IMG/VR virus record: IMGVR_UViG_3300020471_000004 | Location: 1 to 64,000 of that record | Direction: 5' to 3' (one strand) | DNA length: 64,000 bases | Shown: positions 13,917 through 51,241 of the stretch, one piece after another | Position numbering within the stretch: the stretch's first letter is position 1 | Layout: every line of letters starts with the position of its first letter | Position numbers and translations under genes: made by a program | The notes under the pieces: generated by a model | Seen by the model: only the letters and a program-made list of their open reading frames with translations | What the model was told of the DNA's origin: nothing | The model's database searches: none

Positions 13917-14603
13917 CTATTCCAAGTCCACTACCATCAACAAATGTTTAACTTCGCCTTGAAGCCGTGTCGTGCCTACTTCTACGTCAATACCGCGAAT
14001 GGAACTTTCAACCGTTTCTTCTAACTCTTCTGCCCAGTCACCGAACTCACCTACGCGCAAATGGTTACGCCTACGGTAAGAGCGCAATGTACTAGATACA
14101 TCATAGAAGTGATAGAATTCCCCAGGTAACATTTCTTGTGTCTTGATGAACTTGATACGGTTCATTCCTGGGTATTTAACTTTTGAAAGACGGGAAGTTA
14201 ATCCAGTATTTTCTTTAGGTGCTTTTAAATCTTTAACACGAACCTCTACAGTCTTGGTCCCTTTGCTAGGGTCAAGCTTGTTTTGTTTATCGTGTCCTGC
14301 AGGTGCACCTCTTAAACTATCTTTAACAGACTTACCATCTACCTTACCAGTAAATGTGCGTGAGCGTTTAAGTAAAGCACTCAGTTCTCGTTGAGATATT
14401 TTGAACTTTAGGTCCAGTGCTTCTGCATCGATTAAATAGAAGTTACCGCCACGAATAGGCTTAACTCCAAAAACATGACCTGCTTCTAGAATTAGATCGT
14501 AACTACGGTGGTGTTGTAGAAACTTTGCAGGTCTTTTGCCTAAGAACTTATACCAAGCGCAGCTTTTAACGTCTACAGGTTTTGCCGATAGACTTATAAG
14601 CAT
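13917..14603 (-). CDS. basic hypothetical protein, tagged putative head cargo
   Basis: Starts MLISLSA; N-terminal domain similar to 40585..42285 and 27881..28819. Confidence 0.7.
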   Translation of the reverse strand: MLISLSAKPVDVKSCAWYKFLGKRPAKFLQHHRSYDLILEAGHVFGVKPIRGGNFYLIDAEALDLKFKISQRELSALLKRSRTFTGKVDGKSVKDSLRGAPAGHDKQNKLDPSKGTKTVEVRVKDLKAPKENTGLTSRLSKVKYPGMNRIKFIKTQEMLPGEFYHFYDVSSTLRSYRRRNHLRVGEFGDWAEELEETVESSIRGIDVEVGTTRLQGEVKHLLMVVDLE

Positions 14604-14606
14604 AAC

Positions 14607-14936
14607 TTATCTTCTTTTAGGTTTAGGTAAACGTTGAAGCATCTGTATTTTGCGCTTGTACTCCATATAGAAAGAACGCGCTTCTTTACGTGCTTCTTGA
14701 ATCTCCTGAGGAGAGCCTTCACGATACTTAACTTTATCCAGGCGCGAAAGAATTTTAGAGCGCAAGTTACGAGCTTCACGCTGCATAACTGAATAACGAT
14801 CTTTTTTCTGGATACGCTTACGGTAAGGCCCCCGGCGACGGCGAGGTCGAAAGCGGCGCATACGTCTTTGTGCAGGGTCTACACCTAAATCTTTGTAGTC
14901 AACAGATTCAGATGAAAGGTCAAGATTGATTTTCAT
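14607..14936 (-). CDS. Arg-rich putative DNA-binding internal head protein
   Basis: MKINLDLSSES followed by RRMRRFRPRRRRGPYRKR; AAGGA SD. Confidence 0.65.
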   Translation of the reverse strand: MKINLDLSSESVDYKDLGVDPAQRRMRRFRPRRRRGPYRKRIQKKDRYSVMQREARNLRSKILSRLDKVKYREGSPQEIQEARKEARSFYMEYKRKIQMLQRLPKPKRR

Positions 14937-14986
14937 AAGTAAGAATCCTTTAAATCGGCCTTCCTTGGCCCTACTTCACGGCTAAA

Positions 14987-15499
14987 TTAGGCAACTTCTT
15001 TGTAGTAGTCGAAGCTGAATTCAACAGCAACAGGAAGAGCTTGCGAACTAGAACCGTCAAAAGAAAGATCAGGTACAGTCTTGGGCCAGACACCGAAGAT
15101 TTCATAAACAGCGGCTTCACTACCGTCCTGTTTAAAGATTCGGAAAGTGCCTGTGACTGCGTAGTCTGCTTTAAAGTTACCAAGCTGAGATTCATGGTCA
15201 CGGCAATAATTAACCCACTGTTCGAGAGGTTTATAAATTGCCATTTCAGAGTTTTCAGCAAACTCTGCACTCATGCTTCCTGTAACGGTATTCTTACCTG
15301 CGTGCCGCACAGTATGACCAAATACTTCTATCAATACTTCTTCGATAGTCATACCAGGCTTAGTAGCAGTACGGCACTGAATACGCAAAGCTTCTCCAGC
15401 ATTTATACCATCAGGTAACTGCGGAAAAGAAAGCTCGTAGTTGTCTGACAATAAAGGATCGCCGATACTTATAGCATCGTCAAGTGTTGGTTTAGTCAT
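14987..15499 (-). CDS. tail tube protein (T4 gp19-like)
   Basis: Immediately after the sheath; CRTATKPG..HAG..GVWPKTV..VEFSFDY. Confidence 0.85.
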   Translation of the reverse strand: MTKPTLDDAISIGDPLLSDNYELSFPQLPDGINAGEALRIQCRTATKPGMTIEEVLIEVFGHTVRHAGKNTVTGSMSAEFAENSEMAIYKPLEQWVNYCRDHESQLGNFKADYAVTGTFRIFKQDGSEAAVYEIFGVWPKTVPDLSFDGSSSQALPVAVEFSFDYYKEVA

Positions 15500-15510
15500 A
15501 TTAAATTACC

Positions 15511-17130: not shown

Positions 17131-17163
17131 GTATGTTACTCCTATGGATTTAACTCTACTTAA

Positions 17164-17177
17164 CTAGAATTAAATTA
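17164..17177 (-). promoter_or_regulatory. candidate late promoter (TAATTTAATT)
   Basis: Intergenic, upstream of sheath 1; 13/14 identical to 2367..2380. Confidence 0.6.
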
Positions 17178-17181
17178 TTGT

Positions 17182-18230: not shown

Positions 18231-18244
18231 TGTTTTCTCGAAAC

Positions 18245-18292
18245 AAAAAAGCCCCATGTAATGCTAGAAATTCCAACATTATCACAGGGCTC
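18245..18292 (-). terminator. long G-U-rich intrinsic terminator ending the head operon
   Basis: Minus strand gagccc-tgtg-a-taatgttgg-aattt-ctagcatta-catg-gggc-tttttt. Confidence 0.7.
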
Positions 18293-18746: not shown

Positions 18747-19826
18747 TTAGATACGCTTACCTTTAGCAACAGAGCGAACGTTACCTACCAAGAAGCTAAT
18801 GCTTTGGCTAATTAACCAACCTTTGTTAGTTTCGCCTTGGTTAGCACCGTCAGTAGGAGTAGAACGGATACCGCGAGTCGAGAACGCTGCGTGGTGTTCA
18901 GGATCAGATACAACGTAGATTTCACCTTTATCAAGAACGCGTTGGTTCTCAGGACGGAAACCGTCGGTCATAAGTTCCATACCGATTAGTGTACCGATTT
19001 TACCGTTCATTACTAGGTCGTACTTAGATACTGGATCTAAGAAAGCGCTGAACTCGCTGTTACCGATAATGTCTTTCCAGAAGTCATTAGAGATAATCGC
19101 TTTAGTAGCTGGTAAGTTCCAACCAGATACTTGTTCAGAAAGTGACGCAAGCATTTTAGGCGTAAGTTCACCAGAAATGTATGAAATGTCGTTAACGCGA
19201 CCAACAGTTGCATCAACAGCACGTTTCCAAATGCGGTCTTCTGCAACCATTACTGCTTCCATTGCCTGGTCGCGAATGTCACGTAGAAGGTCGCCAGATG
19301 ATTGGTCAAGCTCAAGTTGCGATACGCGTACCGCAGACTTAACTTCGTATTCAGCAGGTGTGAACTGACGGTCACGAATTAGCTGGTAACCCATCTGAGT
19401 TGGTGATGTTGATACAACAGCTTGAACTTCGTGGCGGAACATAGGGATACGCGGGTATTCACCTTGTTTAAGGTTGTTACCTACTGCTAGGTTACGCATG
19501 AAGCCTGCACGGTCTGCTTGCTCAACGATACGATCAGAAATCGCAGCACCAAGAGCAGCCCAGTCATCTAGGTTAGAGTTAGCTTGAGCGATCAAATCAC
19601 GGAATTCCTCAGAAGTCATTGCGTCTTCTTGAGGTGCTTCAACGATTTGTCCAGCAGAAGCCATTGACATTAACTTACCAATGTTTTGCATTAGTTCGTT
19701 ACGGTCGTGTGCGTTGATTTCACCGTTTGATGAAAGCGCCTTCATGCCGGAACCAGGTAAAATTAGGTTGTCTAGCGATTCGCCGTTTGCCATTACGTGG
19801 CGGAAGTTACGAGCAGAATGTTTCAT
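18747..19826 (-). CDS. major capsid protein (HK97-fold)
   Basis: 359 aa in scaffold-decoration-MCP order, GGAG SD. R.GFMR.L..L.QG, A.EA.MV.EDR and G.IGTL.G..L pattern typical of jumbo myovirus capsids. Confidence 0.75.
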   Translation of the reverse strand: MKHSARNFRHVMANGESLDNLILPGSGMKALSSNGEINAHDRNELMQNIGKLMSMASAGQIVEAPQEDAMTSEEFRDLIAQANSNLDDWAALGAAISDRIVEQADRAGFMRNLAVGNNLKQGEYPRIPMFRHEVQAVVSTSPTQMGYQLIRDRQFTPAEYEVKSAVRVSQLELDQSSGDLLRDIRDQAMEAVMVAEDRIWKRAVDATVGRVNDISYISGELTPKMLASLSEQVSGWNLPATKAIISNDFWKDIIGNSEFSAFLDPVSKYDLVMNGKIGTLIGMELMTDGFRPENQRVLDKGEIYVVSDPEHHAAFSTRGIRSTPTDGANQGETNKGWLISQSISFLVGNVRSVAKGKRI

Positions 19827-20619: not shown

Positions 20620-22599
20620 TTAGAAGGATTTCATTGCTCTAGAAAGTTTTGATTGGAAGTCAGAAGTTGAAACCGCAGTTGATTGCGACTCCAAAGTTTT
20701 TTCTTTTGGTACAACACGAGGTTGTAAACGTTGCTCTACAGAACTAACAGATTCCTGTCCGTCTTTACGAGCAAAAGAACTAGCAGCAACCATTTCGGCA
20801 ACTTCGTTTTGGAAGTCAGCGGACTTGCTGATAAGTTCCATCGTCTGGTCAACCAACAGCTTGTTGAATGCACCTGCGTTAGCTTCAAACACGTTATCAA
20901 TAAGCTCACGAGCATTATCAATACCTGCAGCCTTCAAGGTACTGGCCAAGCTTGAAATGATTGGGTTAGACTTTCCACGGAACACACCGTTATTCAGTCC
21001 CATGATAGAAGTAGCAAGGGCAGCACCCAGGCGTTCCATCAGTTTAGCATCGCGGTCTTTCTGGGCTTGTTCGTAGCCTGCAATTTTTGCATCCGCTTGT
21101 GCAACGATTTCTTTAGAGATAACCGTTTGCATTGTTTGTTCGTCAAAAGCAATTGACTCGAAACCGAACTGTTTAAGACCTGACTCTACGCCATCGTTAG
21201 CGATTGCTTTTAAGCAAGCTTGGCGGTAAGTAGGTTGATTAAAGATGCCACGTAGATTACCTTCGACATTTGACTCTGATGCAACTGCAACAGGAGTAGC
21301 GCCATGGAAAGCAACCCAACGGTTTTCACCAGCAACAACAGATACATTAGCTAGGCTAACTTGGTCTGCTTGTAAACCGCCTTCGGTAGAAGATGCAACC
21401 GCAGTCATAACGTCAAGAGAAGCAGAAACAGATACAGAGTCAGATTCAAGCTCTTCATCGTCATCGTCATCTTCTTCATCTTCTTCGTCATCTAGACCAT
21501 CAACGTCTTCGTCTTCGTCAGAGTCATCTTCGTCAGAGTCATCTTCGTCTTCGTCAGAGTCATCTTCGTCTTCGTCTTCGTCTTCGTCTTCGTCTTCGTC
21601 AGAAGAAGAGATAACTTCGAAATCATCGTCCAGGTCATCGAACTCGTCATCGTCCAGGTCCGAATCAATGTCGTCAAGGTCGTCAAGGTCGTCATCGTCA
21701 TCTAGATCCATATCCATGTCGTCATCCAACATAATATCATCTAGGTCATCGTCTTCATCCATAAGAAGATCATCGTCCATGTCCATAGAGGCATGTTCAA
21801 GTTCATCTAAAACTTCTGGATCGACAACGGCGGTAGAACAGCTAGGGCACACTGTAATGTCTTCGCTAGAAGAAAGAACGTGCATACCGCATTCTTCTGA
21901 ATCAGCACAAACAAAGTAATGCGCATCAGTTCCGAAACGGTCAGCAGCATCTTGCACTGCACTAGAGTTAGACTCTAATTCCTGCGCTGCAACTTCTTCA
22001 CCGTAGAAAGGACTGTAGTGAACAGAACCGCTAGAGTTAGAAATAAAGCTAACTTGGTTTTCGGTGTCTTCGTAAGCAGAAACAGGAGAATCGCCTGCTA
22101 GAATAGCCAGGTAGTCTTCTTTGGCTTCTTCAAAAGAAGAGGCAACGACAACGATACCTTGCTCGCCTTCAAGCTCTTGAACAAGAGCGCTTTCAGACTC
22201 TAGCTCGTCTTCTAAATCGCGGTCGAAATCTACATCGGTACTGCACGAAGGACAGTTAGATACAGACTCGCAAGCATCTGCGATAATGTGCGTGTTACAT
22301 TCAGAACACATGGTGTAATGAACTGACACTTGGTCTTCTTGGTCGGCACTGCTGGTAACTTCGAGATCAGTATCTAAAACCTTCATTGAGTCTCTGTTAC
22401 CAGACAGAGGATTCAAAAAAGATTTATGCGCACCAGCAACAGTAGCGATAGCAAAAGAACCGTCGGCAGAAGAAAGAACTTCTAGGGACTCTTGTTTAGC
22501 AACCATTGCGTAGTTACGGATAGCTTGTTCTCGGGTACCTGCAGTAACAACAATACCGCCAAAGCTAGGCTGAGTCGGTGATTTTTGTTTTACTGTCAT
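20620..22599 (-). CDS. putative prohead scaffold/core protein
   Basis: 659 aa, very acidic with a D/E tract of about 110 aa, two repeated Cys-containing modules, many S-x-S sites; first gene of the head operon with GAGGAG SD. Confidence 0.65.
   Translation of the reverse strand: MTVKQKSPTQPSFGGIVVTAGTREQAIRNYAMVAKQESLEVLSSADGSFAIATVAGAHKSFLNPLSGNRDSMKVLDTDLEVTSSADQEDQVSVHYTMCSECNTHIIADACESVSNCPSCSTDVDFDRDLEDELESESALVQELEGEQGIVVVASSFEEAKEDYLAILAGDSPVSAYEDTENQVSFISNSSGSVHYSPFYGEEVAAQELESNSSAVQDAADRFGTDAHYFVCADSEECGMHVLSSSEDITVCPSCSTAVVDPEVLDELEHASMDMDDDLLMDEDDDLDDIMLDDDMDMDLDDDDDLDDLDDIDSDLDDDEFDDLDDDFEVISSSDEDEDEDEDEDEDDSDEDEDDSDEDDSDEDEDVDGLDDEEDEEDDDDDEELESDSVSVSASLDVMTAVASSTEGGLQADQVSLANVSVVAGENRWVAFHGATPVAVASESNVEGNLRGIFNQPTYRQACLKAIANDGVESGLKQFGFESIAFDEQTMQTVISKEIVAQADAKIAGYEQAQKDRDAKLMERLGAALATSIMGLNNGVFRGKSNPIISSLASTLKAAGIDNARELIDNVFEANAGAFNKLLVDQTMELISKSADFQNEVAEMVAASSFARKDGQESVSSVEQRLQPRVVPKEKTLESQSTAVSTSDFQSKLSRAMKSF
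21563..21600. repeat. (tcttcg)x6 in-frame microsatellite encoding (ED)n
   Basis: Read directly; part of the larger D/E low-complexity tract at about 21450-21790. Confidence 0.85.
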
Positions 22600-22907: not shown

Positions 22908-24278
22908 TTACTTTGCATCTAAGTCAAGCGAGTAGTAGTCTACTAGTTTGCCTTTAAGTTCTGCGGATACTCCTGATGAAGGCACATCATAGGAAACAAA
23001 CTTAACGCCTCTACCGTAAGCTTTGGTCACAGAAGCTTTCCACTCATTGTAGCTTTGACCTTTATTCTGGCTAGGGTTATCTAGGCGCGAGCTTTTGCCT
23101 GTATTCTTTGTGTCTGGACTACTGCTTTTTGTGCCTGAACGTTTTTTAGCCTGTTCGACTTTTATTTGGCGACTAGTAGGTGTTTTTTCTATAAGCTTTT
23201 CTGCTTTTCTAAGATCCCTTTGCAAAGGACGTATCTCGGCATTTAAGTCTCTAGCCTGTTGGGCTAATTCTTTTTTCTTTTCCTTGTTATCTGTGTTGTC
23301 CATGCGCTGCTTTATGCGCTCTACTTTTTGCTGCAACTTAACTATGTTCTTATACATTTTATAAGTATCAGGCGCTTTTACTGGAGCCTTAGGCTCCCTA
23401 GTTACTCGTGCTTTGCGTGTCTTAGAAGCAGTTTCATTAGGAGATTTCTTGCGTCCCTCAGGCACTTCTTCACCGTTCATAATACCTGCAATACGGCGTG
23501 CAGCTATACGAGGTCCTGCATAGTACTTGCGCATAGGTCCACCGCTAGCAGGCTGGTGGAATACATGCCAGCCAGGTGCAAGCATACCAGGTGAGCGTTT
23601 CTTGCGTCCCATTTTAGAACCTACGTTGCCTTTACCTCTAGCAGGAGCCGCCGATTCAGATTCAATACTTGATACTGAAATAAACGCTTCGTTGCCTCTA
23701 GAACCGTCACCGCGTGAGCTTCTACCGCGAGAATAGTCTACAAGGTCTTGAACAGCTAAAGGTATAGCACGTACATCTGAACATTCGCGGAAAGCAACGT
23801 GAACATTAGATTTAGTTAGTTCAAAAGAGTAGACACCGTCTTCAAAACCGTCATAGTTTATAGAGTAACCGCTAGGTAGCCGCGCTTGTTTAATAGCTTT
23901 ATAGGCGGCTTGGTTGCCAACGTTTGAATTTGAAGTGCTTTCTCTCTCAAAGTCTTCCTCAAAGCTTAGTGCCTCTGCTTCAAGGTCTGTAATAGACTCT
24001 GAGTAAGGACCGTCAGGGTCAATATCCCATAAACCGTCACTTGCTAGTGCCTCCATTTCCCGTTGTGCGAACAGGCGATTCTTCATGCTAGGGGTATACT
24101 TGGCTTCTTTAGATATGCGGAAAATACTAAATAGACCTGTACGGCTTTTTAATACGTAACGTCCTGGTTGAGCAAAAACTACTCGTGCTTTAGGCTTTAC
24201 TGTAGCAAGAGCCTTTTCAATAGTAGCAGGAATAGGGTGCTTAGAACGTGCGCTTTCTGAAAGTATTTGAATATACAT
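22908..24278 (-). CDS. basic multi-segment protein, tagged putative head cargo
   Basis: MYIQILSESA; internal ERESTS and IESESA sites; Lys/Arg-rich coiled coil. Confidence 0.7.
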   Translation of the reverse strand: MYIQILSESARSKHPIPATIEKALATVKPKARVVFAQPGRYVLKSRTGLFSIFRISKEAKYTPSMKNRLFAQREMEALASDGLWDIDPDGPYSESITDLEAEALSFEEDFERESTSNSNVGNQAAYKAIKQARLPSGYSINYDGFEDGVYSFELTKSNVHVAFRECSDVRAIPLAVQDLVDYSRGRSSRGDGSRGNEAFISVSSIESESAAPARGKGNVGSKMGRKKRSPGMLAPGWHVFHQPASGGPMRKYYAGPRIAARRIAGIMNGEEVPEGRKKSPNETASKTRKARVTREPKAPVKAPDTYKMYKNIVKLQQKVERIKQRMDNTDNKEKKKELAQQARDLNAEIRPLQRDLRKAEKLIEKTPTSRQIKVEQAKKRSGTKSSSPDTKNTGKSSRLDNPSQNKGQSYNEWKASVTKAYGRGVKFVSYDVPSSGVSAELKGKLVDYYSLDLDAK

Positions 24279-24293: not shown

Positions 24294-25271
24294 CTATTTA
24301 CTACGCTTAGTGCTTTTAGTGCTTTTAGTGCTTTTAGTACTACGGGTGCTTTTAGTACTACGCTCTTTGCGGGTTTTAGACTTAGGGCTTAAAGCATCAA
24401 TCTGTTTTTGGACTTTTTCTTGTAAAGCTTCCCACGCATCAACTGCCTTATCCATTTCTGCTTCAACCTTGTCATACTCTTTATTGAGTTTGTCCAGCTT
24501 TTGTTGAATTTCTTTTTTCTTAGAGCCTTCAGCGTCTCTGAGTTCGTACTCAAGATCATCAATATCATCGGCTAGGTCAATGCTTTTGTCTTCAAGCTCG
24601 GCGACCTTTTCAAACTCCTTGCTTGACTCAACACTTTGGCGCAATTCGTCTATTTGTTTTCTAGCTTTTTCTTTTTCTTCTTTTTCTTTGTACTTTTGAG
24701 GATTGTTGGCTTTATCGGCTTTCTCAAGTTCCTTGTGTTCAGCTTCAAGCTTCTTATATTTCTTTTCGAGCTTCTTCTTGGTCTTTTTAGCAGCAACTCT
24801 TTCTTCGTCTACTTCTTTTTTGTAATACTCGATTTCTTTTTTAGCGTCAGCCACTTCTCCCTTGGCGTATTCTATTTCACTTTCGTCTCCGTCCTCTTCG
24901 GCCTCTTCAAGCTCTTCTTGGGCATCTTCAAGACGTTCTTGGGCATCTTCTAACCTACGTTGGTTTTTAGTATCACCTTCTAGGGCATCTTCGGCTTCAT
25001 CTAACTCGAAACCAAGGTTTTCCATTTTAAGAGCCACAGAATCCAAGCGCTTTTCAATTGATTTAGCAGACTTATCTTTTGTAGTAGAAGCATTGTCCTT
25101 TTGAGCTTGCTTCTTGGTAGTGTTGTCACGTTCTGCCTTTGGTTTAGCTAAACGTTTGGCATGGCTGCTGTTCGGGTACTTTTTTAGGTATTTCTTTTTC
25201 TCAGAAGAACCTAATTTTGCAAACTGCTCAGCAGACAAGCCTGCACTTTCTGAATTAAGAGTAATAATCAT
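24294..25271 (-). CDS. K/E-rich coiled-coil protein, tagged putative head cargo
   Basis: MIITLNSESA; KKYLKKYPNSSHAK motif; (STK)n tail. Confidence 0.7.
   Translation of the reverse strand: MIITLNSESAGLSAEQFAKLGSSEKKKYLKKYPNSSHAKRLAKPKAERDNTTKKQAQKDNASTTKDKSAKSIEKRLDSVALKMENLGFELDEAEDALEGDTKNQRRLEDAQERLEDAQEELEEAEEDGDESEIEYAKGEVADAKKEIEYYKKEVDEERVAAKKTKKKLEKKYKKLEAEHKELEKADKANNPQKYKEKEEKEKARKQIDELRQSVESSKEFEKVAELEDKSIDLADDIDDLEYELRDAEGSKKKEIQQKLDKLNKEYDKVEAEMDKAVDAWEALQEKVQKQIDALSPKSKTRKERSTKSTRSTKSTKSTKSTKRSK
24307..24360. repeat. 9-nt tandem repeat (ttagtgctt-like, about 6 units) encoding an (ST[K/R])n tail
   Basis: Read directly. Confidence 0.8.
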
Positions 25272-25279: not shown

Positions 25280-25753
25280 CTAGATTGTTTCATACAAGCG
25301 TTTAAGACCAGCCATCTTTCCTGGGTAACCTTTACGCTGTAACAAATTAAAAAAGTCTACAGGCTTCATGTTGTGCAAGGGATTACTATCTCTAGCAGTA
25401 CCGCGCGGGTGAATATAGTCTTTGACAAATTCATCAAACTCTATTTCGTACTCTACCATACTGTCAACAAACTCCAAGAACTGTTCCCAAAGTTTATCTT
25501 CGTCAGGAGTATTCAGATCCACAAGTTCAAAGGATTTGACCTCGGCAATAGGTAACGCTCGGGGGTATGCCAGTATACCGTGCCTATAGTTTCGAGAGTC
25601 ACGAATACCTGCAAAGCGTTTATCTTTTGCAGCTTTTTCTGCATCGATAAACTCTACAGGCTGGGGGTTTGTAGGCTGTGCCCCTATAGAATAAGGTCTG
25701 AATTTCAGTCCGTAATAGAACTTTTGGTTACTTAATGAAATTAGAAGTTTCAT
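25280..25753 (-). CDS. DarA C-terminal-like domain protein, tagged putative head cargo
   Basis: YYGLKFRPYSIGAQP...RHGILAYPRALPIAEVKSFELV matches my recollection of the DarA_C (defence against restriction A) consensus; starts MKLLISLSN. Confidence 0.65.
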   Translation of the reverse strand: MKLLISLSNQKFYYGLKFRPYSIGAQPTNPQPVEFIDAEKAAKDKRFAGIRDSRNYRHGILAYPRALPIAEVKSFELVDLNTPDEDKLWEQFLEFVDSMVEYEIEFDEFVKDYIHPRGTARDSNPLHNMKPVDFFNLLQRKGYPGKMAGLKRLYETI

Positions 25754-25760
25754 AGATACC

Positions 25761-27434
25761 TCAAATAAGCTTTTCTATGTTAGCTGGCATTCTTAAACCT
25801 AGGCGTTCATAGAAGTCTGCCAAAATAGCAGGGTCAATATAGTTAGCAATAGCAGTAGATATAGTAAGCTTACCGTTATTAAAATGGCCAAGCTCTTTGG
25901 CTACTTTTTGTAAAGCACCTTTTAACCAAGTCTCTGCGTCTTTGTTAGTTACCTGGCGTTTACGAGTAAATAAAGGACACTTTTCAATAATATCTCTTGC
26001 TAGACGTGTACCTTTAAGAGTACGGAATTTGTGAGCAGTAACCCCTTCAGGTAACATAGACTTCAAATATTTGTTTACAGCATTGGCTGTTATACGTCTG
26101 TTACCGAAAGTAAATAGAGGGTCTTTGCGCTTCTTGCCTTCGCTAAGTTGGTCAAGCAGTTCTATAATCAATTTGTTTGTGACAGAATTAGGTTTAAGCA
26201 CATGCTTTTGGACCTGTGCTTTCTTGGCTTCGTACTTTATTTCTCGGTTCTGACCTTTCTTGTAATAGTGACCTGATTGCAGTACAGTCAAACCGTATGT
26301 GGTCTTATCACCTGTCTTGCCTTCACGGGTACCTATACGCGCACTGGTTTGGTACATAACTTCTATAACAAGACACAGCAAGCCTTCTTTGGTTGATATG
26401 CCTTCTGATTTTAGTTTCTGCAACCAACGTCTTCTTACACCAGGCGCTACTTTTTCAAATTCTTCTACAATCTTAAACTTTTTGCTACGTTGCTTAGAGT
26501 TCCACCTTTCGGTGTATACCTTTAGATAGTTTTCAGCAGCAGGGGCCTTATATTCTAAAACATAGGCGTTATCTTTTTTAGGATCGTAGTTAGGATTCAT
26601 GCGAACATCGCCTGCTATACCTTTATTGCTTAACAACAAACCTTTTGAGGTATAGTAAGAAAGAGTATCGTCAATGTAACCAACAAACTGTTCAGGTAGA
26701 TTGTGATGGCGTATGCCTGCATCTTTGATAGCATCAATTACTTCACGGATGTCCAGATACGGCTTACCTGATTGGCGTACATAGTTTACAACAAAGTTTT
26801 TCCATGCTTTATTTACTTCTAGGCTAGCTTTTCGGAATTCAACATAGACAGGATTGTCTTTGTGTTTCTTGCGGAGTTCTTGACTTAGGTGGATAGTGCC
26901 GTCACCACCTAACTTGGTGCTAAGTTTAGAAACCTTTTTAAGTAAACTATCTTGGTCACTTACTTCTAGTTCAAACAGACTTGAAAGAGCTACATCGTTT
27001 AAGTCACTTACTTTGGTCTTTAGAACGTTAATCGCATTCTGCCTAGAAGTTTCTTTAGGAGACGTAGCAATTGTGTAGAACTTTTTGATTATGTCTAGTC
27101 CTGACCTAGATATAAGAGTTTCGTTCTCTATTTTAGCACGTACCTTTTTGTCTCTTACCTGCTTGGCTACTTCATACGCAGAACCTAGAAAGTCTTCGTC
27201 CTCTTCGTGTAAGGTATACCCTTTTAAGAAAAGGCTTGTCATTTCATCGTAAGCTTTTAGGTTAAACTTGTAGTGGGCCATAAACTCACGCCCTTGCTTA
27301 ACCCACTCACGGATGTCGCCAGCTAGGTTATGAGGGAATTTGTATTCAGGACTATCTGAATATGCGACAAGCAGCACCACTTTTGTAAATGCCGTTGCTA
27401 TGTCAGAATTAATTTTTGATAAAGATACTAACAT
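25761..27434 (-). CDS. type IB DNA topoisomerase with long N-terminal extension
   Basis: Catalytic pentad R (SARIG), K (YEAKK), R (AHKFRT), H (ELGH), Y (ANYIDP). Start MLVSLSK at 27434 inferred from the TAATG overlap with the upstream stop. Confidence 0.88.
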   Translation of the reverse strand: MLVSLSKINSDIATAFTKVVLLVAYSDSPEYKFPHNLAGDIREWVKQGREFMAHYKFNLKAYDEMTSLFLKGYTLHEEDEDFLGSAYEVAKQVRDKKVRAKIENETLISRSGLDIIKKFYTIATSPKETSRQNAINVLKTKVSDLNDVALSSLFELEVSDQDSLLKKVSKLSTKLGGDGTIHLSQELRKKHKDNPVYVEFRKASLEVNKAWKNFVVNYVRQSGKPYLDIREVIDAIKDAGIRHHNLPEQFVGYIDDTLSYYTSKGLLLSNKGIAGDVRMNPNYDPKKDNAYVLEYKAPAAENYLKVYTERWNSKQRSKKFKIVEEFEKVAPGVRRRWLQKLKSEGISTKEGLLCLVIEVMYQTSARIGTREGKTGDKTTYGLTVLQSGHYYKKGQNREIKYEAKKAQVQKHVLKPNSVTNKLIIELLDQLSEGKKRKDPLFTFGNRRITANAVNKYLKSMLPEGVTAHKFRTLKGTRLARDIIEKCPLFTRKRQVTNKDAETWLKGALQKVAKELGHFNNGKLTISTAIANYIDPAILADFYERLGLRMPANIEKLI

Positions 27435-39583: not shown

Positions 39584-39913
39584 CTACGCTAGTTGGATTA
39601 TTACGTAAGACTCTGCCTTTGCTTGGTCATACACGACATTGAGTACAGGTCGTGTCAAGGCAGTTTGGGAATAGCCTACAAGGTCTTTACCTATTGCTTC
39701 AAGCACTTGCTTATAAATAGGCTTTTGCTCTACATTAGAAAAATCCCAAGTAGTCTTTGAATTCTCTGTAGTTACCTTCGGATAAAGTTTTTCATCTACT
39801 GCACCTTCATCCAAAGCTGCCTGTACTTGGTCTAAGCAGGATGCAACATCAGTACCTGTAGTAATATCGGCATCACAAGAGCCTGATATAATACTGTTTA
39901 AGTCTAAATTCAT
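39584..39913 (-). CDS. hypothetical protein, possibly tagged
   Basis: Start MNLDLNSIISGS at 39913 has a GAGGA SD. Confidence 0.6.
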   Translation of the reverse strand: MNLDLNSIISGSCDADITTGTDVASCLDQVQAALDEGAVDEKLYPKVTTENSKTTWDFSNVEQKPIYKQVLEAIGKDLVGYSQTALTRPVLNVVYDQAKAESYVIIQLA

Positions 39914-39946: not shown

Positions 39947-40582
39947 TTAGTAAGGCAAACCTGCTAAACTTCTACCAGTAATGAACTTGTAGAATTCTTT
40001 AGATGGAGGTACGCCTGCACGTAGGTAAGTTCTAACGCCTTGCGGCCAGCGCCATTTATCTAAAGAGTATTCTCCTGAACCTGCATTGCCTCCTGTCCAG
40101 CGATTGTGGGCATCACCTTTATTACGGGTTAAGCGAGCTTCTTTTTGCTTTAAAGTAAGCTGACGTAAGAAATCTGCTTTGTCGTAGCCTCTAACATCCA
40201 TTGCAACAGGGAAAGGCAGTTTACCTCTTGCAGAAATCGAAGGTCTCCAGTACCCGAAGACTTTTCTAGGGAACGCTTTGCCTGCATTAAGCTCTTTAAA
40301 CAGTGCTTTACTGTGCGTACCAGGCTTACGTGCAAGTTTTATTGAAGCAGAATCATCTTTTAGCTTCTGGGCTTTGGCTTTACCTACAGCCTTCTTCGGT
40401 TTAAACTTGACTGTTATCTGCACTTCACCACCAAGGTTGTAACCTACCTTAAAGTTCTTGGCAGTTAAGGAACGTGGAAGCTCTGTTTTGTCACCTAATG
40501 CCTCAAGCAACGTAGTTTGAAACTGTTCTGTGCTTTTGGCTATTTTGTCTACAGCACTATTGGATTGTAATTGTACCTTCAT
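39947..40582 (-). CDS. basic protein, tagged putative head cargo
   Basis: MKVQLQSNSA; C-terminal GSGEY..WRWPQG..Y..VPPSKEFYKFI domain. Confidence 0.7.
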   Translation of the reverse strand: MKVQLQSNSAVDKIAKSTEQFQTTLLEALGDKTELPRSLTAKNFKVGYNLGGEVQITVKFKPKKAVGKAKAQKLKDDSASIKLARKPGTHSKALFKELNAGKAFPRKVFGYWRPSISARGKLPFPVAMDVRGYDKADFLRQLTLKQKEARLTRNKGDAHNRWTGGNAGSGEYSLDKWRWPQGVRTYLRAGVPPSKEFYKFITGRSLAGLPY

Positions 40583-40584: not shown

Positions 40585-42285
40585 CTAACTCGCAATTGGT
40601 TCATTTGACTTATCGTACATATCACGTTTGTTGTAATACTCGGTAAATTCTTTAGGGTTAAGTTTACGCAAACGTTTAGCTTGCTGCTCTATTGTTGCTT
40701 TTTTCCGAGTATCGAATCGGATAGTCTGGTAGTTACCATCATCGGCGCCTATGTCATAGACTTTGTATACTGTGATATTCTCGTTCTTTTTAAGAGGATA
40801 AATATCTAAGATAACAAACTCTCTTTTTTCAGTTTCGTCTTTATCAAACTGAATAACATCGCCTTCTTCAAACGGTTCCTCTTTTTCAGGTTCTTGTTCA
40901 TCCGAATCTTCCTCTGATTCCTCTTGGTCGTCTTCATCTTCGGATTCCTCCTCAGTTTCTTCCTCAAGGTCGTCTTCGTAATCTTCGTCATCCTCGTCAT
41001 AGTCAGCAGAGTCTAAAGCTTCTTCTTGTTCAGCTTCTTCGTTTGCTTCTTCATAGGTAAGGTCTTCTTCGTCCTCATCCTCTTCATCAATGTCGAGTTC
41101 ATCTTCTTCATCGAGGTCATCTAGATCTAGGTCATCGTCTTCGTCATCGTCTTTTGCGATTTGGACAGAACGACCTTTCCTCCGAGCTTCTTCCAGTTCT
41201 TCATCAAATATCTCTTCTACTGCTTTGGTATCAGCCTCAGGATCTACAATCTCATCTTCTTCTACCTCAGCATCCTGGTCCTCGTCATCTAAGTCAACGT
41301 CATCGATAGTATCAACGTCAATATCAAAATCGTCATCTTCCTCTAGATCAATGTTATTGAACTTACGAGCAGCAGGAGTTTTTTGTTCCATTTGATCACG
41401 TAAATACTCTTCAGGATTCTTCAAGTCTACAGGAGCATAGTCTTTAGGAACAGTAGGTTCTTGTTCAAGAACTTCACGTATTCTGCGTTTTTCTTCTTCA
41501 CGTTCTTTGCGTAGGCGTTCCTTTTCTTTCTCGATTGCCTGACGTTTTTCTTCGCGTTGCTTTTCTCTAAGAGCTTTAGCTTGTTCACGTTGCTTGGCTT
41601 TAGCACTTGATACTTTGCGTTGTTGCTCTTGTGCAATTTCTTCAAGGGTTACTTTACCTCTTAACCAATTTGCACGAGGCAAAATAGCACTTGCTTCTAC
41701 CATAGCATCGTAGGTATCTGAAGGTATATTCCAAAAAGAACCGTCATCGAATACAACTACACCACCTCGGGCTTGTTTCATAAAGCGAAGACCGAACTTT
41801 GTACCTTTAGGAATTTCAAAGCCTTTCTTGCTGGTCTTGTTGTACTTGAACCTAGTATCTTTGAGTTTACGCCATTGGTAATTACTGAAATCAACTCCGT
41901 TCTTAGACTCTTGTTTGACTTTGTTTTGAGGCTTAAACCTCTGAGCCATATAGTCCACAGATTTAGGAACGTTAATTCGTATAGCGCGTTGTCTGCCTCC
42001 GCCTCTCTTGTCTTGAATAGGAGGCATACGGCGTTTTTTCTTAGAGCGTTCTTCTAAGTAATTCAAGTCGCGCTCGTCAATAGTATGCGCGTAATTGTAA
42101 GTATCAGGAAAAATAAGATAGAACTTATTACCTCTAATAGGTTTAATTCCGAATACAGCACCCCGTTCTACACGAGGCGCCTTTTTGTTGCTTACTAGAG
42201 TTCTAGCTCTAGGGCCGTTGTATTCGTACCACTTGTAATTAGGTAAATCACTAAAAACAACAGTAGCACTTTCTGATATTAGCAT
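40585..42285 (-). CDS. bipolar basic/acidic protein, tagged putative head/core protein
   Basis: MLISESA; two copies of the shared beta domain, coiled coil, long D/E tract. Confidence 0.7.
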   Translation of the reverse strand: MLISESATVVFSDLPNYKWYEYNGPRARTLVSNKKAPRVERGAVFGIKPIRGNKFYLIFPDTYNYAHTIDERDLNYLEERSKKKRRMPPIQDKRGGGRQRAIRINVPKSVDYMAQRFKPQNKVKQESKNGVDFSNYQWRKLKDTRFKYNKTSKKGFEIPKGTKFGLRFMKQARGGVVVFDDGSFWNIPSDTYDAMVEASAILPRANWLRGKVTLEEIAQEQQRKVSSAKAKQREQAKALREKQREEKRQAIEKEKERLRKEREEEKRRIREVLEQEPTVPKDYAPVDLKNPEEYLRDQMEQKTPAARKFNNIDLEEDDDFDIDVDTIDDVDLDDEDQDAEVEEDEIVDPEADTKAVEEIFDEELEEARRKGRSVQIAKDDDEDDDLDLDDLDEEDELDIDEEDEDEEDLTYEEANEEAEQEEALDSADYDEDDEDYEDDLEEETEEESEDEDDQEESEEDSDEQEPEKEEPFEEGDVIQFDKDETEKREFVILDIYPLKKNENITVYKVYDIGADDGNYQTIRFDTRKKATIEQQAKRLRKLNPKEFTEYYNKRDMYDKSNEPIAS

Positions 42286-48753: not shown

Positions 48754-48773
48754 TGTTATCTCCAAAAATTAAA

Positions 48774-49781
48774 TTAATCGCCGCCTGCTGTCCAGAACAT
48801 AACACGCATACCTGCGTTATATTGTTTATCAGCCGTCATGCCTTGATAAGTACGCTCATTACTTTCACTGTAAGGATTAGTCGTTAACGTAGAGCTTTGG
48901 CTCAGTACGTCACTTGATATAATCCCTACTAGGTCAAGCTCTGTGTCGTAACCATACCGCTGAGTGCAAAGGCCGTTAGGAAAAGTCAGTACAATCTCAT
49001 TGCCTTCTCTTATAGACACCTGCTGCTTGTTGTTTATGATCCTGTTTGAATCTGCTGTATCTTCTACTGCGGTTACAGGAATAGTAGGTGCATTAACATC
49101 ACTTTCTCTAACAACAAACTTTTGAATAGCATCACCATCCGAAGAACTTGGATTGTAGGAAAATACGCAGAACAGAGGACTTTTGCCTGTTGTAACAGGA
49201 ACACCTGCAGGTGTAACCATTCGCTGACACACAAACCATAAAAACTTATCGCCATCGCTGTCTGCACTTTCAGACCAGATACCTACAGAAATACCGTGAT
49301 TGGTTTGGTTAAAACACAAACTAAAAGGATATGCCTGGGTATCTGAACCTGCAAGTCCCCAAACTTCATAGTCTAAAGTTCTTCGGTATTCACTTTCTCG
49401 GGAACTGTCGAAGTGAACACTGCCGGGAGTAAGTTTACCAGATGCAATACTTTTAGAGTCCTCTTGTTTTTTAAGAGCTATACGCCAGTTGTTATTTGAC
49501 GGATCTACGATGATTTGTTCAGGAGTGACTATATAGATATCCATCCACTGTTCAGATTCGTTGAACTCAAGAACTATACCCCAAGGTTGACTACTAACTA
49601 TAGAATCTATAGTAGAAGTCGCCTTAAGGTAAATCTTTTCTTGAATATTGTCGATATTTCCTGGTTCAGTGTCATCAACTCGAACTACTTCAAAAGAACC
49701 GGAGTCTTTAAAAGTAGAAGCAATCTGGATAACTAGGTCCCGAAACGTCACAATGCCGTTATATAGGAAACTAGAAGACAT
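48774..49781 (-). CDS. virion structural protein, paralogue 3 of 5
   Basis: Same motifs. Confidence 0.75.
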   Translation of the reverse strand: MSSSFLYNGIVTFRDLVIQIASTFKDSGSFEVVRVDDTEPGNIDNIQEKIYLKATSTIDSIVSSQPWGIVLEFNESEQWMDIYIVTPEQIIVDPSNNNWRIALKKQEDSKSIASGKLTPGSVHFDSSRESEYRRTLDYEVWGLAGSDTQAYPFSLCFNQTNHGISVGIWSESADSDGDKFLWFVCQRMVTPAGVPVTTGKSPLFCVFSYNPSSSDGDAIQKFVVRESDVNAPTIPVTAVEDTADSNRIINNKQQVSIREGNEIVLTFPNGLCTQRYGYDTELDLVGIISSDVLSQSSTLTTNPYSESNERTYQGMTADKQYNAGMRVMFWTAGGD

Positions 49782-49783
49782 AA

Positions 49784-50797
49784 TTAAATACCTGCGCCTT
49801 TAATAAGACAAAACATACGCATGCCTGTATTCCTAGGGAAGTTCGCCTGCATACCAATATATTGTCTTGGTTCGTCTTCACCATATAAAGGTACATCAAT
49901 GGCTTGGTTCTGCGATATAACATCAGCGCTGGTGTAAGCAATCATGTCCAATTCATAGCTATAATCATACCGCTGAGTATTAATACCTTGAGGAAAGCGT
50001 ATAGTGTAGTTATTGTCTTCTGACAAAGAAACTTGTTGCAGAGGATTAATAATAGCACGGCTATCAGGTCCGACTTTAACAGCACTTTCAGGACGAGTAG
50101 GTGCATTAACATCCGTTTCGTAGACTACGAATTTAAGAATAGCTGATTCTACTGCATTAATATCCTCAGAGTCGGCAATATTTGTACTACCTCCACCTGC
50201 TGTGGCAAATACGCAGAACAGAGGACTTTTGCCTGTTGTGACTACAGTACCATCTTTTTGTACAGGTCTTTGAATAGTAAACCAGCTAAAACAGTCACCT
50301 GCCTTATCAAAAGACTCTGCCCACAAAAAGAAACTAATTCCGTGGTCACTGATAGACAGGCGATAGCTAATTGGTATAGCGCGAGGGTCTACACCGCCTA
50401 TATTAAAACACGACCAGTTAGAGTCTGTTCTACTCATGAACTTAGAGTTAGGTTCACCTACTTCATTGTCTAAAAATAAATGACCTGATTGAGAGCTAGT
50501 GCCATTAGCGGCTACCGTATATGTATCACTAAGCTGAGTAACATGGCAAGCCCAGAAGCGTATAAAGCCTCCGTCTGCATCAGTCGCTTCTAATACAAGT
50601 CGCCAATCTTGACCTACAGGATCTACATCAGTAGTAGGGGCAAAAACATAGTGCGTTGTGCCGTCACTAGGAACAGGACTTGAATCACTACCGTTAGCTG
50701 CAATTAAGGTATAACCGTTCGCAACAAGGTCTTGAGCTAGTTCTTTTCCAAGCTTCTGCACAGATACGTAACTATTACGTTCTACAGAAAAGCCCAT
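49784..50797 (-). CDS. virion structural protein, paralogue 2 of 5
   Basis: Same motifs; AGGAG SD. Confidence 0.75.
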   Translation of the reverse strand: MGFSVERNSYVSVQKLGKELAQDLVANGYTLIAANGSDSSPVPSDGTTHYVFAPTTDVDPVGQDWRLVLEATDADGGFIRFWACHVTQLSDTYTVAANGTSSQSGHLFLDNEVGEPNSKFMSRTDSNWSCFNIGGVDPRAIPISYRLSISDHGISFFLWAESFDKAGDCFSWFTIQRPVQKDGTVVTTGKSPLFCVFATAGGGSTNIADSEDINAVESAILKFVVYETDVNAPTRPESAVKVGPDSRAIINPLQQVSLSEDNNYTIRFPQGINTQRYDYSYELDMIAYTSADVISQNQAIDVPLYGEDEPRQYIGMQANFPRNTGMRMFCLIKGAGI

Positions 50798-50806
50798 TTC
50801 GTTCTC

Positions 50807-51241
50807 CTATCTATTTCGAAACTTATGGAGGTTTCTTTCACTTTTAAAATGGTTCAGAAGCACATGATGTTCAGGAGTACCTGGTATCATCCAAGAGCTA
50901 GGAGGCTCTACGTGGTTCTGGAATTCTTTGTTAAACAGTTTGTAACCTTCGCCCAACTCTTTATCAGAGTTTAAGGCTCTTTGCATTATCTCTCCGTCAA
51001 TTGCATTCTGCCTAGTAAAAGCCTTTACCATCCTTTCTTTGACTTTCGAACCATATACAAACGTATACAATTCAGGAGTAGGCATCTTTAAGTATAAACG
51101 AAATGCCTTAAAGAACCCTCTTGCTACTTCCAGTATATGGTCTTTTTCAATATCAAGATAGTAGATCAAGTTCATCACATCATGCAGTTCCCTAGCTAAA
51201 CCTATCTTGGGAATATTGTTTAGAGAGATAAGCATTCTCAT
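50807..51241 (-). CDS. hypothetical protein with tag-like N-terminus
   Basis: MRMLISLN; TAATG-coupled; unrelated to the flanking paralogues. Confidence 0.65.
   Translation of the reverse strand: MRMLISLNNIPKIGLARELHDVMNLIYYLDIEKDHILEVARGFFKAFRLYLKMPTPELYTFVYGSKVKERMVKAFTRQNAIDGEIMQRALNSDKELGEGYKLFNKEFQNHVEPPSSWMIPGTPEHHVLLNHFKSERNLHKFRNR

What the first reader, a model, noticed from the sequence alone, without database searches (positions are those of the whole stretch)
13917..51241. Shared N-terminal tag on about 15 unrelated proteins: candidate capsid-addressing system for an enzyme cargo
Seen, N-termini: MLISLSA (13917), MKINLDLSSES (14607), MYIQILSESA (22908), MIITLNSESA (24294), MKLLISLSN (25280), MLVSLSK (topoisomerase, start 27434), MKINLLESSSA (32220), MTLISLSA (start 34828), MKVQLQSNSA (39947), MLISESA (40585), MRMLISLN (50807). 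Looser matches: MKIDVS..ALSGS (28835), MKIDLTKRSISS (30863), MKLDL..FESSS (protease), MNLDLNSIISGS (39913), MKIDVLHA (27881). Two tags only appear after the start is corrected by TAATG/ATGA coupling, which is independent support. Most carriers are Lys/Arg-rich. Established: T4 internal proteins use a ~10-aa N-terminal capsid-targeting sequence removed by the prohead protease, and phiKZ head proteins carry cleavable propeptides. Inference: this is an analogous Ser-terminated tag that loads a topoisomerase, peptidase, DarA-like protein and DNA-binding proteins for co-ejection. Caveat: the hub (MAISLSG), sheath 1 (MLATSNSS) and 51241 (MSLSI) also match loosely.
Basis: partly seen in the sequence, partly recalled or inferred. 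Interest (0 to 1): 0.9.

Follow-up and report, generated by a model that had tools for sequence, protein, structure and literature searches.

The report
Shared head-cargo tag in jumbo phage
About a dozen unrelated proteins encoded beside the capsid genes of this uncultivated jumbo phage start with the same 7-17-residue peptide, which matches a motif repeated inside the scaffold-like protein and is most likely a cleavable "load me into the head" tag like phage T4's, but with a different predicted cleavage rule.

Summary
An unbiased pattern scan finds L.S.S in 9 and S.SA in 8 of 65 N-termini, against about 0.6-0.8 expected (family-wise p<0.001). A PSSM trained only on distant relatives recovers 10 window N-termini against 0.8 expected, 9 of them in the head module. 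In the closest complete genome (NCTB), hits sit in the head module and not in replication or early genes (Fisher 4e-5). The consensus is h(-7)-x-h(-5)-x-S(-3)-x-S(-1)-A/S(0). It lies on at least 11 unrelated families, including a type IB topoisomerase, a DarA_C protein, KMPT-N proteins and an Arg-rich protein. The same motif is enriched 4-fold inside the acidic scaffold-like protein and occurs at the protease's own N-terminus. It changes from Ser to Ala in all three contexts in the Lu11-like clade. That points to the head maturation protease as the reader of the motif. In PaBG, two tag-bearing proteins were found experimentally in virions. Cleavage, addressing and ejection remain inferred. The hub, sheath, 51241 and 50807 matches are look-alikes. 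Verdict: a new variant of the T4-type capsid-targeting/propeptide system, with predicted small-residue P1/P3 specificity instead of Glu.

The parts
13917..14603 (-). KMPT-N domain protein, 228 aa; tag MLISLS|A (codons 14583-14603)
   Evidence: PSSM 15.8. Pfam KMPT-N begins at residue 15. Orthologs keep the tag: MLISLSA, MLFFVSVSA, MLPFFISVSA.
14607..14936 (-). Arg/Lys-rich 109-aa protein (35% K+R, pI 11.5); tag MKINLDLSSES
   Evidence: NCTB ortholog begins MKIFIDIPSES.
18747..19826 (-). Major capsid protein; conserved ALS at residues 30-32. It is uncertain whether this is a protease site.
   Evidence: PHROG major head protein, 1.8e-93. ALS is invariant in five phages, including the Ala-type Lu11.
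20620..22599 (-). Acidic (25% D+E) scaffold-like protein with 9 internal h-x-[SA]-x-[SA]-[ASN] sites, e.g. LESESA, LESNSS, VASESN, LISKSA
   Evidence: 9 sites observed against 1.98 expected from shuffles, p<0.0005. Over 17 loci, 155 observed against 37.5 expected. No Pfam domain. The PHROG name 'ATPase' is unsupported.
22908..24278 (-). 456-aa basic protein; tag MYIQILSES|A, plus internal sites near residues 203 and 209
   Evidence: NCTB paralogs begin MKIVSISA and MKIISISA.
24294..25271 (-). 325-aa protein; tag MIITLNSES|A; shares a KxYxxKxPNS segment with 33458
25280..25753 (-). DarA_C-domain protein, 157 aa; tag MKLLISLS|N
   Evidence: Pfam DarA_C, 1.7e-7. Orthologs begin MEIFISLSA, MLISISL, MRVLVSIAKA.
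25761..27434 (-). Type IB topoisomerase, 557 aa; tag MLVSLS|K; start coupled to the upstream stop (TAATG)
   Evidence: Pfam Topoisom_I, 1e-19. All 7 database homologs are tagged. An Ala-type ortholog begins MKLNIALAAA.
27881..28819 (-). 312-aa protein with a KMPT-N-like WYRYLG segment; variant leader MKIDVLHA without Ser
   Evidence: Orthologs begin MKVNVLA and MKIDVLSV. PHROG 36535 is shared with 13917.
28835..30763 (-). 642-aa basic protein; longer leader ending ALSGS|V (residue 17), plus internal ASASAS and LESESA sites
   Evidence: No orthologs with a comparable N-terminus were found.
30863..31411 (-). 182-aa protein; possible leader MKIDLTKRSISS (weak)
   Evidence: No hydrophobic residue at -5 and no orthologs.
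31414..32217 (-). Head maturation protease; own N-terminal site FESSS|F at residues 17-22, inside a disordered 30-residue N-terminus
   Evidence: PHROG 18299, 1.5e-92. AF2 model pLDDT 78.5. BFVD fold matches to prohead serine proteases and COG3740, 1e-7 to 5e-4. The site co-varies: QSISF and SMSF in Ser-type phages, FEAMAF and FMATAF in Ala-type phages.
32220..33461 (-). 413-aa basic protein; tag MKINLLESSS|A
33458..34828 (-). 456-aa protein; tag MTLISLS|A (ATGA-coupled start), plus internal SSLSA and DSESA sites
   Evidence: PSSM 15.9. Orthologs.
39584..39913 (-). 109-aa protein; possible leader MNLDLNSIISGS (weak)
   Evidence: The L006 ortholog has no tag.
39947..40582 (-). 211-aa basic protein; tag MKVQLQSNS|A
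40585..42285 (-). KMPT-N domain protein, 566 aa, acidic; tag MLISES|A
   Evidence: PSSM 14.5. Pfam KMPT-N begins at residue 17. Orthologs begin MLKLNLLSISA, MLSQSA, MLRFVALSA, MFFVSLAA, MNLALAAAPA.

Best explanation
The peptide is a clade-specific, cleavable capsid-targeting leader, and its C-terminal half is the recognition site of the phage's head maturation protease.

Proposed steps:
1. Late in infection, about 10-14 cargo proteins are made from the gene cluster around the protease gene. They include the topoisomerase IB, the DarA_C and KMPT-N proteins and basic DNA-binding proteins.
2. Each begins with a short strand with alternating hydrophobic residues, followed by small-x-small (h-x-h-x-S-x-S).
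3. The leader docks the protein to the assembling prohead core. The likeliest partners are the protease's own substrate groove or the scaffold-like protein, by strand pairing.
4. After shell assembly the protease cuts after S(-1). The predicted specificity is P5 hydrophobic, P3 and P1 Ser or Ala. This frees the mature cargo inside the head.
5. The protease also cuts the acidic scaffold-like protein at its 5-18 copies of the same site so that the fragments can leave, and it trims its own N-terminus.
6. The cargo then stays with the DNA and is probably delivered to the next host.

Shown here: the motif, its exclusive N-terminal position, its confinement to the head module, its reuse in the scaffold-like protein and the protease, its Ser/Ala change across the clade, and the presence of tagged proteins in PaBG virions (from the literature). 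Inferred: docking, the scissile bond, removal of the leader, and ejection.
For: - Enrichment at N-termini. Absence from about 288 non-head NCTB genes.
- Tag present on unrelated families and under protein-level constraint.
- Tag kept in orthologs with variable length and sequence over 42 related loci and in all 7 topoisomerase homologs.
- Internal sites: scaffold-like protein 155 observed against 37.5 expected; all other window proteins 22 against 18.4.
- Site present at the protease N-terminus, with a variable residue after S(-1).
- Ser to Ala shift in tags, scaffold sites and protease site in the monophyletic Lu11-like clade.
- Protease fold matches predicted prohead serine proteases.
- Cargo is basic and carries domains of packaged effectors (PMC5512222).
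- PaBG virion bands include gp83 (MLIKINLLEAVAA...) and the 221-kDa gp202 (MGSLFTLNSLSA...), and PaBG virion proteins are proteolytically processed (PMC7412058).
- Precedent: the T4 CTS has targeting determinants in its N-terminal part and processing determinants at its end, and gp21 has its own N-terminal site (PMC9026906).
Against: - No cleavage site has been determined for any member of this clade.
- The protease has no Pfam hit and no significant match to a solved structure.
- The Ser to Ala co-variation is essentially one clean evolutionary switch plus several mixed clades. It coincides with higher GC (48-52% against 39-45%), so composition may contribute.
- The MCP's conserved ALS does not follow the Ser/Ala switch, so the MCP cleavage site is unknown.
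- Several leaders lack the S-x-S core (27881, 30863).
- Internal sites in the cargo proteins are only weakly enriched, 8 against 4.5.
Confidence: 0.6

Rival explanations
1. The motif is only a protease cleavage site, for maturation or activation, and has no addressing role. Cargo enters the head through other determinants, and the N-terminal position merely gives the protease access.
For: The S-x-S core is shared with internal scaffold sites that cannot be addressing signals. SPN3US shows that many head proteins are packaged without any propeptide (PMC10052503).
Against: Removing 6-10 residues from a dozen or more unrelated proteins has no obvious purpose unless the peptide acts before it is cut. 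N-terminal tags carry extra conserved hydrophobic positions (-7 and -5, often -4 and -2), whereas internal sites are typically h-E-S-x-S. The exclusive N-terminal position across the clade mirrors the T4 CTS.
Confidence: 0.22
2. The leader is an uncleaved assembly strand that pairs with a head-core component. The resemblance to the scaffold sites reflects a shared binding partner rather than proteolysis.
For: Alternating hydrophobic and small residues suit strand pairing. No cleavage data exist for this clade.
Against: PaBG virion proteins are proteolytically processed. The motif occurs many times in an acidic scaffold-like protein, a pattern known from cores that are degraded (T4 gp22, phiKZ). 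The site also sits at the protease's own disordered N-terminus.
Confidence: 0.1
3. It is a Sec-type signal peptide cleaved by host signal peptidase I, whose rule is also small residues at -3 and -1.
For: The small-x-small pattern preceded by hydrophobic residues formally resembles the A-x-A rule (general knowledge).
Against: Leaders are 7-11 residues with no 8-15-residue hydrophobic core. Carriers are basic DNA enzymes and DNA-binding proteins. The same motif is repeated inside a highly acidic cytoplasmic scaffold-like protein. Tagged PaBG proteins are in virions.
Confidence: 0.02
4. It is chance, composition, or a translation-initiation or DNA-level signal at gene starts.
For: MK- starts are generally favoured in bacteria and phages (general knowledge).
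Against: Family-wise p<0.001 against internal segments. The motif is absent from about 288 other NCTB gene starts. Synonymous codons are diverse. The tag is conserved in orthologs despite sequence drift.
Confidence: 0.01

Closest known systems
Phage T4 capsid targeting sequence (CTS) of internal proteins IPI-III and Alt, removed by the gp21 prohead protease
   Same: A short (7-19 residue) N-terminal leader on otherwise unrelated, often basic, head-internal proteins. It ends in the protease's site. The same site occurs repeatedly in core and scaffold proteins and near the protease's own N-terminus. Carriers diversify rapidly (PMC9026906; PMC3012670).
   Different: T4 cuts after Glu (L/I-x-E). 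Here no Glu is conserved, and the conserved positions are small residues (Ser or Ala) at -1 and -3 with a hydrophobic residue at -5. T4's IP leaders are near-identical through common descent, whereas here the leader is degenerate and spread over at least 11 unrelated families. The cargo set here is larger and includes a type IB topoisomerase and, in relatives, a 220-kDa helicase-like protein.
phiKZ / 201phi2-1 / SPN3US head-protein propeptides cut by the gp175/gp245 protease
   Same: Jumbo myoviruses that load many ejection proteins and use one protease motif for the scaffold, cargo, MCP and the protease itself (PMC10052503).
   Different: The motif there is S/A/G-x-E with Glu at P1. Most propeptides are long (111-254 residues) and about 80% of head proteins are uncleaved. 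Here the leaders are 7-17 residues and contain no Glu. The phage is a different lineage (PaBG/Lu11/Y3/NCTB group).
[quoted passage not shown]
   Same: An N-terminal signal of fewer than 30 residues directs a large anti-restriction enzyme into the head. A DarA-family domain is also present in one carrier here (PMC9024508; Pfam DarA_C).
   Different: The P1 signal is needed in more than 9 residues, is not known to be shared as a sequence motif among many proteins, and is not known to be the protease site. The P1 MCP is cut after Glu120.
Herpesvirus assemblin (Ala|Ser cleavage) and the HK97 gp4 / COG3740 prohead serine proteases
   Same: A capsid maturation serine protease. The predicted preference for a small P1 residue resembles assemblin's Ala at P1 (general knowledge). 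The fold matches predicted prohead serine proteases.
   Different: There is no sequence-level or solved-structure match. This family has an invariant Cys/His cluster (C198, C201, C214, H216) not described for those proteases. Its specificity has not been measured.

Membership tests
T4-type capsid targeting sequence / cleavable internal-protein leader (functional class) | Short N-terminal peptide shared by otherwise unrelated head-module proteins | tested here: met
   10 strong and 3-5 probable carriers. Only 2 carrier pairs are homologous beyond the tag.
T4-type capsid targeting sequence / cleavable internal-protein leader (functional class) | The leader ends in the same motif that is repeated in the scaffold/core protein and occurs in the protease itself | tested here: met
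   Scaffold-like protein: 155 sites against 37.5 expected over 17 loci. A co-varying site is present at the protease N-terminus.
T4-type capsid targeting sequence / cleavable internal-protein leader (functional class) | The leader is removed by the prohead protease in mature virions | not testable with these tools
   No N-terminal or semi-tryptic data exist for this clade. PaBG is only reported as 'processed'.
T4-type capsid targeting sequence / cleavable internal-protein leader (functional class) | The leader is sufficient to package a heterologous protein | not testable with these tools
   This needs a fusion experiment in a culturable relative.
T4-type capsid targeting sequence / cleavable internal-protein leader (functional class) | Carriers are physically present in virions | tested here: inconclusive
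   Literature only, and in a relative: PaBG gp83 and gp202 are virion bands and both carry the tag. There are no data for this phage.
T4 gp21 / phiKZ gp175 substrate motif (sequence family) | Glu at P1 (L/I-x-E or S/A/G-x-E) | tested here: not met
   No conserved Glu at the end of the leaders. The conserved residues are Ser or Ala at -1 and -3.
Prohead serine protease (HK97 gp4 / COG3740 / assemblin-like fold) | Fold similarity to known prohead proteases | tested here: inconclusive
   BFVD: many matches to predicted structures named prohead proteases, E 1e-7 to 5e-4, TM 0.3-0.5. PDB: no match with E<=0.001. No Pfam or PDB sequence hit.
Prohead serine protease (HK97 gp4 / COG3740 / assemblin-like fold) | Invariant His and Ser catalytic residues | tested here: inconclusive
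   H131, S188, H216, E243 and S245 are invariant in 23-26 sequences. Their spatial arrangement was not examined.
Sec signal peptide | Positively charged n-region, a hydrophobic core of at least about 8 residues, then A-x-A | tested here: not met
   Leaders total 7-11 residues and have no hydrophobic core.

The most novel reading that the evidence does not exclude
A 7-residue leader (M-L-I-S-L-S-A) is a complete, minimal capsid-loading signal whose receptor is the maturation protease itself. The protease would act first as a cargo adaptor, holding substrates by strand pairing in its groove, and then as the releasing enzyme. Its specificity would be small residues at P1 and P3 with a hydrophobic P5. 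That is closer to herpesvirus assemblin than to the Glu-specific T4 and phiKZ enzymes. Such a signal would let the whole ejected proteome of uncultivated PaBG/Lu11-like jumbo phages be read from sequence alone, including a type IB topoisomerase and a 220-kDa helicase-like protein.
Probability: 0.25. Interest if true: 0.8.

Novelty: new variant of a known kind. Interest (0 to 1): 0.62.

Why it matters
If correct, it has three consequences.

1. It gives a sequence rule that lists the packaged, probably ejected, proteins of a whole lineage of jumbo phages, most known only from metagenomes. These include enzymes not usually thought of as virion cargo: a type IB topoisomerase, a giant helicase-like protein, and KMPT-N and DarA_C proteins.

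2. It predicts a head-protease specificity (Ser or Ala at P1 and P3) that differs from the Glu rule of T4 and phiKZ. That bears on how capsid proteases diversified.

3. It offers a very short candidate tag for loading foreign proteins into phages that infect Pseudomonas, Erwinia or Dickeya, testable in culturable relatives.

Tried and rejected
- **DNA similarity to known phages:** megablast found no match. Relatives were found only at protein level.
- **Literature:** searches for cleavage sites or N-terminal data in this clade found nothing.
- **Protease identity by sequence:** no Pfam hit, even at E<=1 over 23 family members; only weak zinc-finger-like hits to the Cys cluster. No PDB sequence hit and no PDB fold hit. 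Only the viral predicted-structure library gave protease matches.
- **MCP 'ALS' as the capsid cleavage site:** left open. It is invariant even in Ala-type phages and does not fit the h-x-S-x-S register.
- **Untagged topoisomerase homologs for contrast:** the word-based search returned only 7 close, tagged relatives, so no untagged outgroup was obtained.
- **Rejected as tags**: hub MAISLSG, sheath MLATSNSS, 51241 MSLSI, 50807 MRMLISLN, 18299 DLIALSC.
- **DNA-level signal:** rejected.
- **Signal peptide:** rejected on leader length.
- It was left out and sent to no other tool.
- **Co-variation measure:** the looser Ser/Ala statistic is noisy (rho 0.58, not corrected for phylogeny). I do not treat it as several independent events.

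Full report
**What the window is.** All long ORFs lie on the minus strand. The region encodes the structural module of a jumbo myovirus:
- tail sheath, 15511-17130
- major capsid protein (MCP), 18747-19826
- an acidic 659-aa protein, 20620-22599
- a head maturation protease, 31414-32217
- baseplate and tail genes further along

There is no nucleotide-level relative among 50,697 phage records. At protein level the closest relative is Phage NCTB (MCP 72%, protease 76%). Next come Pseudomonas phages Lu11 and PaBG, then Erwinia phage Y3 and the Dickeya AD1/JA phages. The window is part of IMG/VR contig IMGVR_UViG_3300020471_000004, 232,692 bp.

**Checking the observation.** Both corrected starts are sound.
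- The topoisomerase ATG at 27434 overlaps the upstream stop. Seven independently called database homologs (33-97% identity) begin MLVSLSK, MLITLSR, MLVSLSLK, MLVEFERYMALSA or MLTGFKSLSA.
- The 34828 start is an ATGA overlap, and its orthologs carry the motif.

Four tests show the motif is not chance.
1. The strict core occurs 7 times in 20,639 residues, always at the extreme N-terminus.
2. I enumerated all gapped three-residue patterns in residues 2-17 and compared them with random internal 16-mers of the same proteins. The top patterns are L.S.S (9 proteins, 0.56 expected) and S.SA (8 proteins, 0.78 expected). No pattern reached more than 6 in any of 1000 null draws.
3. I trained a PSSM only on distant loci, excluding the window, NCTB and the 78%-identical contigs. 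It finds 10 N-terminal hits in the window against about 0.8 expected, 9 of them between 13917 and 42285.
4. In the complete NCTB genome (318 genes called with a start rule that ignores the motif), 7 of 30 head-module genes score against 6 of 288 elsewhere (Fisher 3.8e-5). Five of the six outside hits are near threshold (5.6-6.9); the sixth, at 11.5, is a 1,942-aa giant protein.

The serines use six different codons from both codon boxes, so the constraint is on the peptide and not on a promoter or mRNA element. With the first 14-22 residues removed, only 13917/40585 and 24294/33458 are detectably homologous. The tag therefore sits on at least 11 unrelated families.

**Anatomy of the signal.** Anchored on the last conserved residue, the consensus is h(-7)-x-h(-5)-x-S(-3)-x-S(-1)-[A>S,N,K,V,F](0). 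Examples: MLISLS|A, MTLISLS|A, MYIQILSES|A, MIITLNSES|A, MKVQLQSNS|A, MKINLLESSS|A.

The 42 related loci fetched around the protease gene show the same architecture with free variation in length and sequence. Examples are MKIKVFVSESA (four paralogs in L009), MNITINLSSISA, MSINITFESLSA and MIQIQISLSA.

In the Lu11-like clade, Ser is replaced by Ala: MIIALAAVQA, MIISLAAVAA, MDVQIALAAS.

Within single orthologous families the leader drifts but keeps the pattern.
- The 40585 family: MLISESA, MLKLNLLSISA, MLSQSA, MLRFVALSA, MFFVSLAA, MNLALAAAPA.
- The topoisomerase family: MLVSLSK, MLITLSR, MKLNIALAAA.

The same comparison removes the look-alikes.
- The sheath's NSSAGVY is kept even in Ala-type phages, so it is part of the sheath fold.
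- The hub is MALEVGKG in NCTB.
- 51241 shares its start with its own paralog family.
- 50807 is MRVVVTGG in NCTB.

**What reads the signal.** The motif is not only N-terminal. The 25% acidic protein beside the MCP (20620-22599; PHROG name 'ATPase', no Pfam domain) contains LESESA, LESNSS, FISNSS, VASESN and LISKSA. Its orthologs contain 5-18 such sites each. Against composition-preserving shuffles:

| Protein class | Sites observed | Sites expected |
|---|---|---|
| Scaffold-like protein, 17 loci | 155 | 37.5 |
| Tagged cargo proteins, internal (window) | 8 | 4.5 |
| All other window proteins | 22 | 18.4 |

. A many-times-cut acidic protein next to the capsid gene is the classical picture of a scaffold or core protein degraded by the maturation protease, as in T4 gp22 and the phiKZ inner-body proteins (PMC9026906).

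The protease itself carries the site in its N-terminal 30 residues, which are disordered in the AF2 model: window FESSS|F, relatives QSISF and SMSF, Lu11-like FEAMAF and FMATAF. In all three contexts, positions -5, -3 and -1 are conserved and position 0 is not. I therefore place the predicted scissile bond after S(-1), giving P5 hydrophobic and P3 and P1 small.

Ser-type and Ala-type usage change together in the leaders, the scaffold sites and the protease site. This needs caution. On the protease tree the clean all-Ala state is one monophyletic clade and other clades are mixed (rho 0.58, p 0.002, uncorrected). The Ala clade also has higher GC. I count it as one concerted switch, partly compositional, that shows both contexts tolerate the same small-residue substitutions.

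**Is it a protease?** Sequence methods give only the PHROG family (1.5e-92). There is no Pfam hit and no PDB sequence hit. The AF2 model (pLDDT 78.5, core above 80) has no significant match among solved structures. In the viral predicted-structure library, beyond close relatives (PaBG, phiRSL1, Bacillus phage G gp19), it matches dozens of entries named prohead serine protease, COG3740 head maturation protease or XkdF, with E between 1e-7 and 5e-4. H131, S188, H216, E243 and S245 are invariant, as is a C198/C201/C214/H216 cluster. I regard the protease assignment as likely but not proven.

**Who carries the tag.**
- 25761-27434 is a type IB topoisomerase (Pfam 1e-19).
- 25280-25753 has a DarA_C domain.
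- 13917 and 40585 have KMPT-N domains that begin right after the leader.
- 14607 is 35% Lys+Arg.
- Ten of 13 candidates have pI above 9.

DarA and related domains were described in proteins that phages package and inject (PMC5512222).

The PaBG virion proteome gives independent empirical support. It lists gp83 (35.1 kDa, unknown function) and gp202 (221 kDa, helicase-like), and states that virion proteins are proteolytically processed (PMC7412058).
- PaBG gp83 begins MLIKINLLEAVAA.
- The 1,969-aa helicase-like protein begins MGSLFTLNSLSA. It is the ortholog (31% identity over its full length) of the NCTB giant protein that was my only strong PSSM hit outside the head module.

So two tagged proteins are physically in virions of a relative. 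Whether their leaders are removed was not reported.

**Mechanism and comparison.** The closest known system is the T4 capsid targeting sequence. T4's leaders are 7-19 residues on diverse internal proteins. Targeting determinants lie in the first part and processing determinants at the end. The same protease motif recurs in core proteins and near gp21's own N-terminus. The present system matches each of those architectural points.

It fails the sequence definition of both T4 (L/I-x-E) and phiKZ/SPN3US (S/A/G-x-E), because no Glu is conserved. It is therefore an analogue with a different predicted specificity, not a member of those motif families.

It also differs in scale (at least 11 unrelated carriers), in degeneracy, and in cargo.

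Rivals:
- Cleavage site only, with no addressing. This is the main alternative and cannot be excluded computationally.
- An uncleaved assembly strand.
- A Sec signal peptide. This is rejected because the leaders are 7-11 residues with no hydrophobic core.
- Chance or a DNA-level signal. This is rejected.

**Verdict.** The novelty is a new variant of a known kind. Cleavage, sufficiency for packaging and ejection need the experiments listed under next steps.

Noticed in passing
window 20620-22599 (-): The PHROG/RefSeq name 'ATPase' for this family looks wrong. The protein is 25% Asp+Glu, has no Pfam domain and carries 9 protease-type sites, which fits a scaffold or core protein.
   Followed up: partly
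L051:18076-23904 (NCTB) and L052:8542-14451 (PaBG): A giant helicase-like protein (1,942 and 1,969 aa) encoded far from the head module carries the tag (GLESLSA; MGSLFTLNSLSA). It is band 1 of the PaBG virion proteome, so a roughly 220-kDa enzyme appears to be packaged. The window phage's ortholog lies outside the window.
   Followed up: partly
window 31414-32217 (-): The protease family has an invariant Cys/His cluster (C198, C201, C214, H216; weak zinc-ribbon or rubredoxin-like hits). This has not been described for prohead proteases, and the model matches no solved structure.
   Followed up: partly
window 3041-4000 (-): A 6-pyruvoyl-tetrahydropterin synthase (QueD-like) domain. NCTB also annotates QueE and GTP cyclohydrolase I, which suggests 7-deazaguanine modification of the DNA.
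   Followed up: no
window 15511-17130 and 57317-58963 (-): Two tail-sheath paralogs in one structural module. PaBG and Lu11 are annotated the same way.
   Followed up: no
window 46517-52269 (-): An array of five paralogous proteins of about 340 aa (starts MGFTIEKN, MGFTTKRE, MGFSVERN, MSLSIERN and similar), interrupted by the small gene 50807-51241. Y3 annotates its homologs as 'tail sheath'.
   Followed up: no
window 34825-36003, 37127-39142, 59068-60165 (-): Two glycosyltransferases and an NAD-dependent DNA ligase are embedded among head and tail genes, and this arrangement is conserved across the clade.
   Followed up: no
window 42295-46173 (-): This 1,292-aa protein has candidate sites at residues 28-33 (IIAES|L, LVSLS|V), and NCTB has IISES|G at a similar position. 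It may have a longer propeptide of about 30 residues.
   Followed up: no
window 27434-27874 (-): An untagged 146-aa gene (conserved ISCPKGTYAV; weak SpoIIAA-like hit) sits inside the cargo cluster and is translationally coupled to the topoisomerase. The same arrangement occurs in NCTB and L006.
   Followed up: no
window 24294-25271 and 33458-34828 (-): These two tagged proteins share a short basic segment just after the leader (KKYLKKYPNSSHAKR and RKAYIEKHPNSKYAKG). It also appears in Lu11-like orthologs as RERYIKLYPHSSHRF.
   Followed up: no
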